From Octopus sinensis (taxonomy: Eukaryota): a DNA stretch of 64,000 bases. The stretch lies in the NCBI RefSeq assembly GCF_006345805.1, contig NC_043018.1, positions 3,844,001-3,908,000 of the forward strand, written 5' to 3'. This document shows, one piece after another, positions 47,677 through 54,396 of this stretch. Within the stretch, counting starts at the first letter, position 1. The number at the start of each line of letters is the position of its first letter. The position numbers and the translations under genes were made by a program. Below the pieces are notes generated by a model. The model saw only the letters and a list, made by a program, of their open reading frames with translations. It searched no databases and was not told the origin of the DNA.

Positions 47677-47905
47677 AGCTCAGGCAGAGGCCAGTGCCAT
47701 CCTTGTACAATATCAGACAGAAGCAGAGTCCCTCCAAAATGTCTTGTCATCCGAAGGCCTTAATTACACTAACGAAGGGTTCCTGCAATATATGGCTATC
47801 CGCATAATCTCATCACTTAAAAATCCTCTCCATGTTGGTATGAACATGCCAGAAAATCCAAATGCGATTTCGTTTAGGGTCCTACCACCTCCGCCATCGT
47901 CATAA
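47677..47905 (+). CDS. SPFH protein terminal exon 7a ((Q)AQAEASAILVQYQTEAESL...FRVLPPPPSS*)
   Basis: Acceptor ttttgttgttcttcag, phase 2 matches exon 6. Total CDS is 939 nt (312 aa + stop). AATAAA at 48011. Confidence 0.85.
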
Positions 47906-49094
47906 AAAATAGTCTCTTATGATTAAAATGTTGAGACGTACTAGTTGTGGAGGAGAAATAATTGGTTAGTTAATTAAATTATTAATTACCATGAAATTTA
48001 TAAGAAATTAAATAAACTTTACTCTAATCATTTAAAAATTTTTTGATTACATTATTTTATTTTATTTTATTTTAAATTATTTATTTGCCATCATGGGGCA
48101 GGTTTGGTCATGTGATTAAGAAGTCTTGCTTCACACTCATGTGGTTGTGAGTCCCACTGCACGGCACTTTGGGCTAATGTCTTCTTTGACCCCAGGACAA
48201 CCAATAGCTTGAGAGAATTTGGTAAATAGAAACTGCTGGAAGCCCAGTATATGTATGTGCATGATATGTGTTTGTGTGTGTATATATGCATGTGGGTTTC
48301 ATCATCACCATCATTGTCATCATTGCTGTTGTCATCATCATCATTAACAACAACAACATCTGGTTTCCATTCTGGCATGGGTTTGTATTTGTGAATATAC
48401 GCTTATAGGTGCTGACTTGGCCTTGTGGTAAGAAACTTGCTTTGCTACCTCATGGCTGCAGATTCAGTCCCACTTTGTGGCACCTTGCAGGAAGTGTCTT
48501 CTAAAGCCTCAGGTCAACCAAATCCAAACTGAAAGAAGCCCATCGTGTGTGTGTGTGCATGCGTGTGTGTGTCCATGCGTGTGTGTGCGTGCATGCATGT
48601 ACAGTTCCAGGCCAACTATCCAGCAAGCCTGGGACTAGAAGTATCCCAGATATTTGGATTTTCTGGTTGTCAGAGGACAGTCTAAGTACATACCTCGAAT
48701 ACAAAATAAATTATGGAAAGTAAAAAATTTTGAAAAGTTGTATTTAACAGATTGAAATTAATACGTTTTTTTAAAGCAGGAACTGTTTGATATAATTAAT
48801 TCACTTAAAATTTTGTAAAATCTATAACACACTGTTCCATGTAAATAGCAGAATGGCTGAAGAGAGTGAAAATTAAATGAAGAAAAATAAAAAGCATGAT
48901 TTTAGTTGACTGGTGCAGGCACAAATTAATATATAATTCGAAAATAGACAATGTATAATCTCTATCAATCCACTTCAAAAACAGGTTTTTTCTTTTTACT
49001 AAATACAGGATATTTGCATGGAATAGCATGATATTTCCAGATTTTTAGAAATTCCAGATATTTAGAAACCAGATAAAGGTCCGGCACTATATAT

Positions 49095-50400
49095 ATCATC
49101 ATCATCATTTAACGTCCGTTTTCCATGCTAGCATGGGTTGGATGGTTCAACCGCGGTCTGGGAAGCCAGGAGGCTGCACCAGGCTCCAGTCTGATCTGGT
49201 AGTGTTTCTACGGCTGGATGCTCTTCCTAATGCCAACCACTCCGTGAGTGTAGTGGGTGCTTTTTACATGCCACTGGCACAGGGGCCAGAGGAGGCTGGC
49301 AACGGCCATGATCGGTTGGTGCATTTTACGCAAACATCTCTCCTGCACGCCACATCCGATGCTTCTTATGCCCAACATTTCTCTCAGGGTACTTACCCTC
49401 TGTTGTGGGTGCACACTGCCATTACACAACCAGCGGATCAGGCTAACTTCATTTCATTCAAGCCTACTCATATCCTCCGCAGTCATGGCCCATATTTCAC
49501 TGCCGTGAAGCATGGCAGTTCACACACATGCATTGTACAATCTGCCTTTTACTCTGAGCGAGAGACCCTTTGTCACCAGTAAGGGTAGAAGCTTTCTAAA
49601 CATTGCCCAGGCTATTCTTATTCTCATGGTAACACTCTCTGAGCATCCACCCCACTACTAACGTGGTCACCGAGGTAGCAGAAGCTATCAACTACTTCTA
49701 GTTTCTTCCCCAGGAGTGTGATGGAATCTGTTTTCTGAGTATCAATGGTGTCTATTGCACCTGTGCGTCTGCTGCACACGAAAGCTATCTTCTTGGTTAA
49801 TCTTCCTTTGATTTTTCTGCACCTTTTATGTGTCCATAGCTTACACTGGGTACATCTTATGGAGTTTCTACCTACACCTTTTCTACAGATCGAGCAGGGC
49901 CACCTACCTGAGGAGGTGTGTGATGAATTCGCCTTCTTACTTACTAGAACTTTGGTCTTTGCTACATTGACTCTAAGGCCTTTTGATTCTAAACCTTGCT
50001 TCCACACCTGAGATTTCTTTTCTAGTTCCAGTAGTGAGTCTGTTATGAGGGCCAGGTCATCAGCATAGAGGAGCTCTCAGGGGCAACCCATCTTGAATTC
50101 CTCTGTTATTGCCTGGAGGACTATGATGAATAAAAGAGGAATGAGGGCTGAACCTTGGTGGACCCCTACTTCTACCTGGAATTCTTCACTATACTCATTG
50201 CCAATCCTAACCTTACTAATGGCCTCTCTGTATAGGGCCTGTATAGCCCTTAATAACCATTCGTCAATTTCCAGTTTCTGCATCACCCTCCAGATAAGGG
50301 ATTAGGGGACCCTGTCAAAGGCTTTCTCAAAGTCCACAAAAGTATAGGGGTTTATCTTTAGCTAGGTATTTCTCCTGCAATTATCAAACTATGAATATGG
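49095..50400 (-). mobile_element. RTE-type LINE, 5'-truncated and internally deleted (RT core + 3' UTR + (GAT)n tail)
   Basis: Reads 'FVDFEKAFDRVP', 'VGVHQGSALIPLLFIIVL', YADD at ~50055-50066 and 'EVVDSFCYLGD'; 3' UTR ends ...cgttaaatgatgatgatg. Confidence 0.88.
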
Positions 50401-50657
50401 CATATATATATTGATGTGTTTTAGCCCCTTTGCTTTTCCCTTGGATAACATCGGTAGCGTGGAGAGGAGAGGCTGGTATGCATGTGTGACTGCTGGTCTT
50501 CGCAAAAGACCTTGCCTGGACTTGTGCTGCGAATGGGAAGTTTCTAGGTGCAAACCAAAGGGGGCTTTTTACTATTTCTCTCTTTCTCTCTTCTATCTCT
50601 CTCTATCTCTATCTATCTATCTATCTATATATCTATCTATATATCTATATATATATA

Positions 50658-52128: not shown

Positions 52129-52137
52129 AAACGCTAC

Positions 52138-52198
<61 letters not shown>

Positions 52199-54158
52199 TA
52201 TATATCATCATTATCATCATCGTTTAACGTCCGCTTTCCATGCTGGCATGAGTTGGATGATTTGACTGAGGTCTGGTGAACCAGATGGCTGCACCAGACT
52301 CCATATATATATATATATATATCCTTTTGATTTGTTTCAGTTATTGGACTGCAGCCATGACGGGGCACAGTCTTGAAGGCTTTCGTTTAACAAACTAATC
52401 CTGGTACTTATTCTGTTAGATTCTTTTGTTGAATCGCTAAGTCACTGAGACATAAACAACCAGCACCTGTTATGAAGCAGTGGGGAGATCAGCAACACAC
52501 ACACACACACAATGGGCTTTCACACAGTTTTCTTCTACCAAATTCACTGACCAAACATTGGCTAGCTGAGGTCCATGCAGCAGGACAGAACCCAACACTA
52601 ATTGATTACAAATCTTACTTCTTACCCTCACAACCGTGCCTGCTCTCTCTCTCACACACACGCATAATAGGGGAGATGCAAACATGAATGAATGATGGTG
52701 TCCCACTCAGAGATGACAAATGAGGTTTACGTACCCTATTGATTGGTTATTCTGCATTTTCAAGGACCAGTGGACCTGAAAATCCATTCCTTGAAAAACA
52801 AATACAAGGTTGACAACTAGAGGGTCATTTGACCAAAACACCTTGCTTCAAATATGACCCCTGTCCAACCCATTGTAGCACAGAATTAGATGGACATTGA
52901 AACGAACGAACACACAGGATTAACCTTTTAGCATTCAGATTAGCTTAACTGATATTCTGCTCATTTATCCACATTGTTTTCAATTAATCCTGCTTTATCT
53001 CAGCTTTGACACTTCAACGGTATGATTGTTTATTTTATTTTTTTTAGAATGACATTGCAGGGTAGGTGTGAGAGGGTAGATCTGGTCGCTTTGAACATAA
53101 AACAAGTAGAATATTTGGGCTAGATGTGGCCAGTTTTAATGCCAAACGTTTAAATGTCTTTTATTTTTTCCTTGTTGATAAAACCAGAGAGGAGAGATTG
53201 TCCAAATGCCATTTGTTGTGGTTCTTTGCTACACGTTTACACAGAGACAGAGGAAATTGCCAGTTTTTAGATAATATGGATGGACAAGGAGAATGTTTCC
53301 CAAACTGGTGAGCTGGCAGAATCATTAGAATTCAGGGGCGAAATGCTTAGCAAGATTTCATCTATCCTTACGTTCTGAGTTCAAATTCCACCGAGGTTGA
53401 CTTTGCTTTTCATCCTTTCAGGATCGATGAAATAAGTACCAGTTACATGCTGGGGTTGATGTAATCGAGTGGCCCCCTTCCTCCCAAAATTTTCAAGGCC
53501 TTGTGCCTAGAGTAGAAATAAGGAGAGTGTTTCTCAATCAGAGTTCCTTGGAATCTTAGTTTCTGTGAGAGATCTCAAAGAAATTCTGCCAGAAGCAGTG
53601 AAGATTACCATCATCATCTTAATGCTTGCTTTTCTATGTTTGCATGGATGGATGGGTTTTCTTAAAGTAGATTTTCTATGGTTGGATGCCTTTCTTGTCA
53701 TCAGCCCTCACCTGTTTTCAAGCGAGGTGATATTTCCCCTCCATGGCCAGACAAGTTTTTGTAGAACTTTGGAAATGAATGACACTGCTTGTATGACAGT
53801 GATGCTCGTTTACTACAATCTAGCAATGTCAAAACAAGAAGACATACATACATGCACACACACACCTTTTATACACATAGATATGTGTGTGTGTGTGTGT
53901 CCAGTCTTCATTCTCACAACCACCTTCACTACATCTGTTACAACCACTTCTTTTAACTGTCACTACAACTACTACTACCACTACTACTACTACTACTACA
54001 ATTAACACTGCTTGCCTTCACTACTAGTACTACTACAACTACCACCACCACCACCACAATCATAACTACTACCAACACTTTGCTATTACTAATACAAATA
54101 CAGCCTTGCCCATCACCATCAAATTCTCACCAATGTCCTTCCTTTTGTTGTTCTTCAG

Positions 54159-54396
54159 AGCTGAGTCAGAGGCCAGTGCCATCCTTATACAATATCAGAA
54201 AGAAGCAGAGTCCCTCCAAAATGTCTTGTCACCTGAAGGCCTTAATTACACTAACGATGAGTTCCTGCAATATATGGCCATCCGCATAATCTCATCACTT
54301 AATAATACTCTCTATGTTGGAATGAACTTCCCAGAGAATCCACATTCAATTCCTTTTCAGCGCCCACCACCACCCAATGTCACACCCAAAAAATAG
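54159..54396 (+). CDS. Duplicated alternative terminal exon 7b ((Q)AESEASAILIQYQKEAESL...FQRPPPPNVTPKK*)
   Basis: Paralog of 7a with the same acceptor and phase, open to TAG at 54394-54396. Total CDS is 948 nt (315 aa). AATAAA at 54452, 54476 and 54491. Whether it is expressed cannot be shown from sequence. Confidence 0.65.

What the first reader, a model, noticed from the sequence alone, without database searches (positions are those of the whole stretch)
47677..54396. Tandemly duplicated, both-intact terminal exon gives the SPFH protein two alternative C-termini
Seen: exon 6 ends in phase 2, and two paralogous exons 6.5 kb apart (7a 47677-47905, 7b 54159-54396) each have the same acceptor, correct phase, an open frame, their own stop and downstream AATAAA. 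No copy of exons 1-6 was found between them. The duplicated block (~47500-48300 vs ~53950-54770) also includes a shared old SINE. The products share the coiled coil but differ in the tail (FRVLPPPPSS vs FQRPPPPNVTPKK). Established: the C-terminal coiled coil and tail of SPFH proteins mediate oligomerisation into membrane cages. Inference: alternative last-exon choice could yield two subunit types from one gene, comparable to the two-gene PHB1/PHB2 or ERLIN1/2 pairs.
Basis: partly seen in the sequence, partly recalled or inferred. Interest (0 to 1): 0.75.

Follow-up and report, generated by a model that had tools for sequence, protein, structure and literature searches.

The report
Duplicated last exon, two protein tails
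An octopus membrane-scaffold (SPFH) gene carries two tandem copies of its last coding exon, both intact since before a species split dated at about 34 million years and already annotated as two isoforms; this is a well-known way for a gene to make two alternative protein ends.

Summary
The window is Octopus sinensis LOC115223175, a seven-exon SPFH/Band-7 gene (29599-47905 or 29599-54396). Exon 7 occurs twice (47677-47905 and 54159-54396), and these are the only two copies in the genome. Both have the same acceptor and phase, their own stop codons, and a positionally conserved AATAAA.

RefSeq already models both forms (X2 = 7a, X1 = 7b; exact matches), and so does the transcript-based O. vulgaris annotation.

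New here:
- O. bimaculoides has an intact but unannotated 7b with copy-specific flanks, so the duplication predates the ~34-My species split. Argonauta has a single exon 7.
- If 7b were non-functional, the chance of it staying open and unshifted in both species is about 0.003-0.07.
- Both copies evolve alike and fast (omega ~0.6, against 0.13 for exons 1-6), with seven A/B residue differences fixed in three species.

In the AF2 model, exon 7 encodes the end of the long helix, a second helix and the tail.

This is a tandem-duplicated alternative 3' exon, a common and well-described kind of event. No transcript reads could be examined, so isoform ratio, tissue use and any hetero-oligomer role remain untested.

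The parts
29599..29701 (+). Exon 1 (ATG at 29599): N-terminal membrane-anchor helix
   Evidence: AF2 helix 3-30
33322..33458 (+). Exon 2: start of the SPFH domain
   Evidence: Pfam Band_7 over residues 29-202
36730..36862 (+). Exon 3: SPFH domain
38668..38807 (+). Exon 4: SPFH domain
43911..43985 (+). Exon 5: end of the SPFH domain and start of the long helix
46802..46923 (+). Exon 6: long helix; donor CA|GTAAGG in phase 2, shared by both terminal exons
47626..47676 (+). Last 51 nt of the intron before 7a (branch-point region, polypyrimidine tract, AG); 96% identical to the 7b copy
47677..47905 (+). Terminal exon 7a, coding part (76 codons plus TAA); gives RefSeq isoform X2, 312 aa
47906..48084 (+). 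3'UTR of 7a with AATAAA at 48011-48016; 94% identical to O. bimaculoides
48085..48290 (+). SINE-like element at the distal end of duplicated block A
49624..50301 (-). Decayed LINE reverse-transcriptase fragment in the 7a-7b spacer
   Evidence: Pfam RVT_1 (below Pfam's gathering score) and PHD
50800..51796 (+). Decayed Mos1/mariner transposon in the spacer; its first ~650 nt (to 51446) align with O. bimaculoides
   Evidence: Pfam HTH_48 and Transposase_1; synteny
54108..54158 (+). Last 51 nt of the intron before 7b, with the same acceptor as 7a
54159..54396 (+). Terminal exon 7b, coding part (79 codons plus TAG); gives RefSeq isoform X1, 315 aa
54397..54554 (+). 3'UTR of 7b with AATAAA at 54452, 54476 and 54491; 95% identical to O. 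bimaculoides
54555..54745 (+). SINE-like element at the distal end of duplicated block B

Best explanation
A segment of about 0.65 kb was duplicated in tandem in an ancestor of Octopus. It held the end of intron 6, the last coding exon, its 3'UTR with the poly(A) signal, and an adjacent SINE. The duplication happened before the O. bimaculoides / O. vulgaris-sinensis split and is not seen in Argonauta.

The gene, Octopus sinensis LOC115223175, encodes an SPFH/Band-7 membrane protein and now has two alternative 3'-terminal exons. The exon-6 donor splices either to the proximal acceptor (7a, followed by cleavage at the 7a poly(A) site) or, when transcription runs past 7a unspliced, to the identical distal acceptor 7.2 kb away (7b). 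The two mRNAs encode proteins identical over residues 1-236. They differ in the end of the long helix, the following turn and short helix, and the C-terminal tail.

Shown here: the anatomy, the annotated isoforms, the age of the duplication, and the retention of both copies. Inferred: that the choice is decided by competition between splicing and polyadenylation at 7a and continued elongation, and that the two proteins differ in function, for example in assembly or capping of the oligomeric cage or in N-glycosylation.
For: Gene model and SPFH identity:
- Seven canonical AG/GT exons close in frame with either terminal exon.
- Pfam Band_7 E = 2.5e-20.
- The AF2 model (pLDDT 76) shows a TM helix, an SPFH domain, a long helix 179-260 and a helix 269-283. 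Its best Foldseek hits are subunits of the prohibitin, erlin1/2, HflK/C, stomatin and flotillin complexes.

Both isoforms are already modelled:
- RefSeq X1 and X2 equal my 7b and 7a models exactly.
- O. vulgaris has 312- and 315-aa models, from an annotation whose splice forms come from PASA on Iso-Seq/RNA-seq (PMC10700109).

Not an artefact:
- There are only two copies in the genome.
- O. bimaculoides has both copies. Orthologous flanks are 88-96% identical (A-A and B-B), against 54-75% for A-B outside the ~50 nt adjoining the acceptor.
- Quartet sites in the exon: 13 support orthology, 1 supports species grouping, 1 is crosswise.

Retention of 7b:
- Its acceptor, frame, stop and AATAAA are intact in O. 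sinensis and O. bimaculoides. The O. vulgaris 7b peptide is also open.
- Neutral simulation gives P = 0.0025-0.07 for an open, unshifted 7b in both species.
- Between paralogues, the exon (84-87%) and the last 51 nt of the intron (86-96%) are far better conserved than the flanks.

Selection:
- A codon model gives omega 0.55 over the tree (p = 0.035 against 1). The 7a and 7b tip branches are symmetrical at 0.67 and 0.64.
- The rest of the gene has omega 0.13. That 7a is itself relaxed fits shared use of the two exons.
- Seven residue differences between 7a and 7b are fixed in three species.
Against: - No transcript read, junction count or 3'-end datum could be examined here. No transcript-derived ORF of this octopus gene, of either type, is in the protein collection.
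- O. bimaculoides RefSeq does not annotate 7b.
- Taken alone, neither 7a nor 7b tip branches reject neutrality (p = 0.41 and 0.34).
- Both exons differ between species at about the non-coding rate (8.8-8.9% against 8.7%).
- Part of the exon/flank contrast between paralogues could reflect past gene conversion rather than selection. The ratio of fixed to tip differences is 30:14 in the 3'UTR against 4:15 in exon nt 1-150, p = 0.0008.
- With identical acceptors, the proximal exon should be favoured kinetically, so 7b could be a minor form.
Confidence: 0.75

Rival explanations
1. 7b is a non-functional relic of a partial duplication. It is spliced in only as low-level noise, which evidence-driven annotation pipelines picked up. 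Its intactness reflects chance plus past gene conversion from 7a.
For: - dN/dS on the 7b tips (0.64) does not differ significantly from 1.
- Exon divergence between species equals the non-coding rate.
- There is a signature compatible with past gene conversion of the exon core and acceptor.
- The proximal exon has an identical acceptor and should win kinetically.
- 7b is unannotated in O. bimaculoides.
- No octopus transcripts were found in the collection.
Against: - 7a shows exactly the same relaxed pattern (0.67), whereas a sole functional exon would be expected to keep a constraint like the rest of the gene (0.13).
- 7b is open, unshifted and keeps its acceptor and AATAAA in two species whose split is dated ~34 My; the O. 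vulgaris 7b peptide is also open. Neutral P is 0.0025-0.07.
- Since the species split, the quartet pattern shows essentially no conversion (13:1:1).
- 7b-specific residues (P261, E270, T286, F293, S299, R304, P305) and a dibasic end (KK/RR) are conserved across species.
- The 7b 3'UTR is 95% identical between species, against a 91% background.
Confidence: 0.17
2. 7b is the last exon of a separate transcription unit: a truncated gene copy or a spacer-initiated transcript, rather than an alternative end of LOC115223175.
For: The 6.25-kb spacer contains transposon remnants that could supply promoters.
Against: - No copy of exons 1-6 lies between or after the two exons.
- 7b starts in phase 2 behind a canonical acceptor, so it needs the exon-6 donor to be read in frame.
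- The only in-frame ATG just upstream of the acceptor is not conserved in O. bimaculoides.
- The RefSeq and O. vulgaris models join exons 1-6 to 7b.
- The next gene is on the opposite strand.
Confidence: 0.03
3. The second copy is an assembly or haplotype artefact.
For: None found. This is only the general prior for repeat-rich 2.7-Gb assemblies.
Against: - The copies are 13% diverged in the exon and 25-45% in the flanks.
- Both are present, with copy-specific orthologous flanks, in an independent assembly of another species.
- Both appear in the O. vulgaris protein set.
- There are only two copies genome-wide.
Confidence: 0.01

Closest known systems
Tandem-duplicated exon substitution at the C-terminus (for example the duplicated 3' exons of tropomyosin TPM1 / lev-11 / Tm1)
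   Same: Homologous neighbouring 3' exons are used alternatively, giving isoforms identical except for a homologous C-terminal segment that is often coiled-coil or disordered. In humans, 77 of 236 such events are C-terminal swaps, a strong enrichment (PMC9741552).
   Different: This case is much younger than most human events, which are mostly older than 500 My. It predates the ~34-My split but is absent in Argonauta. Both copies are under relaxed rather than strong constraint. The host gene is an SPFH scaffold, for which I know of no described example; that statement rests on my own knowledge and on unproductive literature searches, not an exhaustive one.
Mutually exclusive duplicated terminal exons in Drosophila pip and the 3' variable regions of PGRP-LC
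   Same: Tandem duplicated terminal exons are chosen one at a time (PMC9013439).
   Different: PGRP-LC choice is controlled by competing RNA structures. Here I found no conserved complementary selector between intron 6, the region after 7a and the region before 7b. There are only two copies, not a cluster.
Two-subunit SPFH cages: PHB1/PHB2, ERLIN1/ERLIN2, HflK/HflC
   Same: The architecture is the same: N-terminal anchor, SPFH domain, long helix and C-terminal segment. The model's best structural matches are exactly these subunits. There are two related subunit variants in one organism.
   Different: Those pairs are separate genes. Here a single gene gives variants identical over residues 1-236 and 76% identical in the last 76-79. 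Sequence similarity to erlin and prohibitin is remote (E = 1e-5 and 8e-4), so the protein belongs to a distinct subfamily whose named hits here are molluscs, a rotifer and an annelid. Co-assembly has not been tested.

Membership tests
SPFH / Band 7 superfamily | Match to the Band_7 (PF01145) domain above the curated threshold | tested here: met
   73.7 bits against a cut-off of 23.6, E = 2.5e-20, residues 29-202, for both isoforms
SPFH / Band 7 superfamily | N-terminal membrane anchor followed by the SPFH domain and a long C-terminal helix | tested here: met
   AF2 model: helix 3-30, alpha/beta domain 34-176, helix 179-260, helix 269-283. Full-length Foldseek matches to PHB, erlin, HflK/C and stomatin subunits, E down to 8e-11 and TM up to 0.53.
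SPFH / Band 7 superfamily | Assembly into large ring- or cage-shaped oligomers on a membrane | not testable with these tools
   Only single-chain prediction is available.
Erlin family (ERLIN1/2 orthologue) | Close sequence relationship to erlins | tested here: not met
   Best PDB sequence match is erlin-1 at only E = 1.3e-5. A memory-typed ERLIN2 probe found only a weak match to exon 7. Homologues in the database are unnamed or labelled 'prohibitin-2-like'.
Prohibitin family (PHB1/2 orthologue) | Close sequence relationship to prohibitins | tested here: not met
   Prohibitin chains match at E = 8e-4 to 0.95. The automated 'prohibitin-2-like' or 'Prohibitin' labels on three homologues are not backed by such similarity. 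No phylogeny was made.
Tandem-duplicated alternative 3' exon (homologous exon substitution) | Two adjacent homologous exons with the same splice phase and acceptor | tested here: met
   76% aa and 87% nt identity, identical 20-nt acceptor, both complete the same split codon
Tandem-duplicated alternative 3' exon (homologous exon substitution) | Each copy has its own stop codon and poly(A) signal | tested here: met
   TAA at 47903-47905 and TAG at 54394-54396. An AATAAA is positionally conserved in all four copies of two species.
Tandem-duplicated alternative 3' exon (homologous exon substitution) | Both copies conserved in other species | tested here: met
   Intact 7a and 7b in O. bimaculoides DNA and in O. 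vulgaris proteins. Single copy in Argonauta.
Tandem-duplicated alternative 3' exon (homologous exon substitution) | Mutually exclusive use in mature transcripts | tested here: inconclusive
   RefSeq X1/X2 and the O. vulgaris PASA-derived models each contain one copy only. No reads or transcript contigs could be inspected.

The most novel reading that the evidence does not exclude
Octopus makes a two-subunit SPFH cage from a single gene. The 7a and 7b isoforms would co-assemble, or form distinct cages, because they differ only in the C-terminal part: the end of the wall helix, the second helix and the tail, including a 7b-specific N-N-T glycosylation sequon and a dibasic end. That would be a splicing-based route to the heteromeric arrangement that prohibitins, erlins and HflK/C reach with two genes. 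The symmetrical relaxation or diversification of both exons (omega ~0.6 against 0.13) would then reflect subfunctionalisation of the cap.
Probability: 0.15. Interest if true: 0.55.

Novelty: new member of a known kind. Interest (0 to 1): 0.28.

Why it matters
SPFH proteins build membrane cages, and the solved prohibitin, erlin and HflK/C complexes each contain two related subunits encoded by separate genes. A gene that produces two C-terminal variants by exon choice would be a compact natural experiment on which part of the subunit sets cage composition. It also offers a fairly young, datable example of how a duplicated 3' exon becomes an alternative exon.

The practical gains are small:
- The O. 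bimaculoides annotation lacks the 7b isoform and mis-models the gene across an assembly gap.
- The two Octopus isoforms are real candidates for isoform-specific study.

The phenomenon itself is ordinary, and both isoforms are already in RefSeq.

Tried and rejected
- A whole-genome Pfam Band_7 search did not flag the window, because the exons are too short and only the best candidates are scored.
- A memory-typed human ERLIN2 probe found only a weak hit to exon 7b, so the gene is not a close erlin relative.
The exons were instead found by ORF reading and a splice-aware scan.
- A search for short transcript-derived ORFs joining exon 6 to 7b found nothing of either type. This is uninformative about 7b specifically.
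- O. vulgaris DNA could not be fetched, so that species enters only at protein level.
- LOC115223175 appears in no paper text, nor in the supplements of two octopus transcriptome papers.
- No conserved complementary 11-mers link intron 6, the region after 7a and the region before 7b, so I dropped the competing-RNA-structure model.
- I rejected recent concerted evolution of the exons, because quartet sites are 13:1:1 in favour of orthology. Older conversion of the exon core remains possible.
- I rejected the assembly artefact and the separate gene copy (see the rival explanations).
- A relaxed search in Argonauta found no second exon 7, only short repeats of the exon's end. Tandem Repeats Finder did not report them.
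Full report
WHAT IS THERE

The window is contig C22:3844001-3908000 of a 2.72-Gb genome. Exact protein look-ups identify the genome as Octopus sinensis and the gene as LOC115223175. I rebuilt the gene from the sequence.

| Exon | Coordinates | Note |
|---|---|---|
| E1 | 29599-29701 | ATG at 29599 |
| E2 | 33322-33458 | |
| E3 | 36730-36862 | |
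| E4 | 38668-38807 | |
| E5 | 43911-43985 | |
| E6 | 46802-46923 | ends CA\|GTAAGG, phase 2 |
| E7a | 47677-47905 | stop TAA |
| E7b | 54159-54396 | stop TAG |

All exons have canonical AG/GT borders, and the frame closes with either terminal exon, giving proteins of 312 or 315 aa. The 7a and 7b exons follow the same 20-nt acceptor, complete the same split codon, and stay open to their own stops. Each is followed by AATAAA motifs, one of which is positionally conserved. No other copy of exons 1-6 exists in the window. The whole genome holds only these two copies of exon 7, with E = 3e-29 for the paralogous match. The one correction is that secure homology of the duplicated block starts about 50 nt upstream of the acceptor (about 47626 / 54108), not at 47500 / 53950, where both sides are trinucleotide low-complexity DNA.

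WHAT THE GENE IS

Both isoforms match Pfam Band_7/SPFH well above threshold (E = 2.5e-20). Sequence similarity to solved structures is remote: erlin-1 at 1e-5 and prohibitin at 8e-4. The named homologues found are molluscs, a rotifer and an annelid, with 37-69% identity outside Octopus.

An AlphaFold2 model built on a 29-sequence alignment (mean pLDDT 76) shows an N-terminal helix (3-30), an alpha/beta SPFH domain (34-176), an 82-residue helix (179-260), a turn, a second helix (269-283) and a low-confidence tail. Its best structural matches are full-length subunits of the prohibitin, erlin1/2, HflK/C, stomatin and flotillin complexes.

Exon 7 starts at residue 236/237. It therefore encodes the last third of the long helix, the turn, the second helix and the tail. 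From my own knowledge of the published cage structures (not tested here), this corresponds to the part that bends inward and closes the top of the cage.

IS THE SECOND EXON USED?

I could not examine reads. Three lines of indirect evidence bear on the question.

1. RefSeq models both forms. XP_029649480.1 (isoform X2) equals my 7a protein and XP_029649479.1 (isoform X1) equals my 7b protein, letter for letter.
2. Octopus vulgaris has 312-aa (7a-type) and 315/329-aa (7b-type) models. The paper describing that annotation states that alternative splice forms were added through PASA updates from Iso-Seq and RNA-seq assemblies (PMC10700109).
3. The comparative evidence described below.

The protein collection contains no transcript-derived ORFs of this octopus gene of either type. 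Their absence says nothing specific about 7b.

AGE AND ORTHOLOGY

The O. bimaculoides locus (L001) has a 7a-type exon at 14095-14320, which is the annotated gene end. About 2.7 kb further on, at 17028-17262, it has an unannotated 7b-type exon with the same acceptor, an open frame, its own TAG and AATAAA motifs.

Flanks identify the copies as orthologues. A-A and B-B flanks are 88-96% identical, whereas A-B flanks outside the ~50 nt adjoining the acceptor are 54-75%. The spacer is syntenic, and O. sinensis carries extra insertions. Quartet sites in the exon favour orthology 13:1:1, and in the 3'UTR 30:0:0.

The duplication therefore predates the split of O. bimaculoides from the O. vulgaris/sinensis clade, dated at about 34 My in PMC10700109. 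Argonauta hians has a single exon 7 and no second copy in the 7.4 kb before the next called gene or the rest of the 10-kb flank, even at relaxed thresholds. Transcript-derived orthologues from other cephalopods show a single C-terminus type. These facts rule out an assembly or haplotype artefact.

SELECTION

Between O. sinensis and O. bimaculoides, syntenic non-coding DNA differs at 8.7% of aligned sites (833/9622).

| Exon | Divergence |
|---|---|
| E1 | 2.9% |
| E2 | 6.6% |
| E3 | 5.3% |
| E5 | 5.3% |
| E6 | 10.7% |
| E7a | 8.8% |
| E7b | 8.9% |

dN/dS is 0.13 for exons 1-3+5 and 0.14 for exon 6, but 0.58 for both 7a and 7b. The excess of non-synonymous change in the duplicated exons is significant (Fisher p = 0.008).

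A four-taxon codon model gives omega 0.55 overall, below 1 at p = 0.035. The 7a tips have omega 0.67, the 7b tips 0.64, and the internal branch 0.35. Neither tip class alone rejects neutrality. So both copies are relaxed, or partly diversifying, and they are relaxed symmetrically. If 7a were the only functional exon, it would be expected to keep the constraint seen in the rest of the gene and in the family alignment. It does not.

Retention of the frame is the stronger argument. I took substitution and indel rates from the surrounding non-coding DNA (0.142 indel events per substitution). On those rates, the chance that a non-functional 7b would stay open and free of frameshifts over its first 66 codons in both species is 0.0025 when counted from the duplication, 0.013 under a conservative halving, and 0.07 when counted only from the species split.

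Seven residue differences between 7a and 7b are fixed in all three Octopus species: S261P, G270E, P286T, M/L293F, A/L299S, V/A304R and L305P. At the sites the family alignment covers, 7a keeps the family consensus (EGF..., KNP...) and 7b carries the derived states. The tails differ because of a 2-nt indel after the proline run, so they are frameshifted versions of one another. The 7b tail ends in two basic residues in every species: KK, KK and RR.

POSSIBLE PAST GENE CONVERSION

Differences fixed between A and B (arisen before the species split) and lineage-specific differences stand at 30:14 in the first 150 nt of the 3'UTR. In the first 150 nt of the exon the ratio is 4:15 (Fisher p = 0.0008). 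Either the exon core and acceptor were once under much stronger constraint, or they were homogenised by gene conversion until some time before the species split. The second reading is simpler, and it means the exon/flank contrast between paralogues cannot be taken as pure evidence of selection. Since the split there is little sign of conversion.

MECHANISM

The shared exon-6 donor can pair with two identical acceptors, 0.75 kb and 7.2 kb downstream. Choosing 7b requires that neither splicing to 7a nor cleavage at the 7a poly(A) site happens first. The most likely control is therefore kinetic competition between splicing/polyadenylation at 7a and elongation. That is an inference, not a demonstrated result. 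I looked for conserved complementary sequences of the kind that govern PGRP-LC 3' region choice (PMC9013439) and found none.

COMPARISON WITH WHAT IS KNOWN

Alternative use of tandemly duplicated exons is a classic mechanism. In the human set analysed in PMC9741552, 77 of 236 such events swap one C-terminal region for another, a strong enrichment. These regions are often coiled coils or disordered tails, and tropomyosins carry three duplicated 3' exons. Drosophila pip has clusters of duplicated, mutually exclusive terminal exons.

The octopus case is a new member of this class, in an SPFH gene. It is fairly young, and both copies are relaxed. It is already present in public annotation but, as far as my searches reach, not discussed in any paper.

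VERDICT

- Observation: confirmed.
- Interpretation: supported as far as alternative C-termini go; untested for the two-subunit idea.
- Novelty: new member of a known kind, with low to moderate interest.

Noticed in passing
L001:17028-17262 (O. bimaculoides GCA_001194135.2, CM046622.1): An intact 7b-type terminal exon is not annotated in O. bimaculoides. The called gene ends at the 7a-type exon (L001:14320).
   Followed up: yes
L001:12415-12883: An N-gap in the O. bimaculoides assembly removes exon 4. The RefSeq, EukProt and UniRef models of LOC106879019 (P0002-P0004) therefore read through intron sequence or skip part of the SPFH domain.
   Followed up: partly
P0027 / P0028 (Patella vulgata LOC126832201 isoforms X2 / X1): In a limpet member of the same family, the two annotated isoforms are identical from about residue 85 on but have different, homologous N-terminal parts (anchor plus start of the SPFH domain). 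This looks like duplicated alternative 5' exons, the mirror image of the octopus case.
   Followed up: no
L002:18500-19150 (Argonauta hians): About 65 nt spanning the last ten codons, the stop and the start of the 3'UTR of the single exon 7 recur twice more downstream, at about 320 and 480 nt, as degenerate copies. The 3' end of this exon seems prone to local duplication.
   Followed up: partly
window 46921-46926: The exon-6 donor reads CA|GTAA, so retaining intron 6 gives CAG TAA, an immediate stop. The product would be a 236-aa protein lacking everything encoded by exon 7. Truncated variants ending inside the exon-6 region occur among transcript-derived ORFs of another cephalopod (P0041-P0043).
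   Followed up: no
window 46980-47640 and 53960-54100: Intron 6 and the region before 7b are filled with long trinucleotide arrays (ACT, CAT, CAC and similar) that give long spurious open frames on both strands.
   Followed up: no
window 22771-23583 (+): A 271-aa open frame matches Tc1/mariner-type transposase domains (HTH_Tnp_Tc3_2 and DDE_3). It lies upstream of the SPFH gene and looks like a relatively well-preserved transposase.
   Followed up: partly
window ~58050-64000 (-), by synteny with L001:18518-23065: The next gene downstream in O. bimaculoides lies on the opposite strand and encodes a NuA4/EAF6-type protein (PF09340). The syntenic region of the window begins about 3.7 kb past 7b, so the two genes converge. 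O. sinensis has about 2.6 kb (54597-57174) that O. bimaculoides lacks, with the breakpoint inside the B-copy SINE.
   Followed up: partly
window 54303-54311 and 54375-54383 (residues 285-287 and 309-311 of isoform X1): 7b carries an N-N-T sequon, conserved in three species and created by the P286T change. In O. sinensis and O. vulgaris it also has an N-V-T in the tail. 7a lacks both. If the C-terminal part faces a lumen, the isoforms would differ in N-glycosylation.
   Followed up: no
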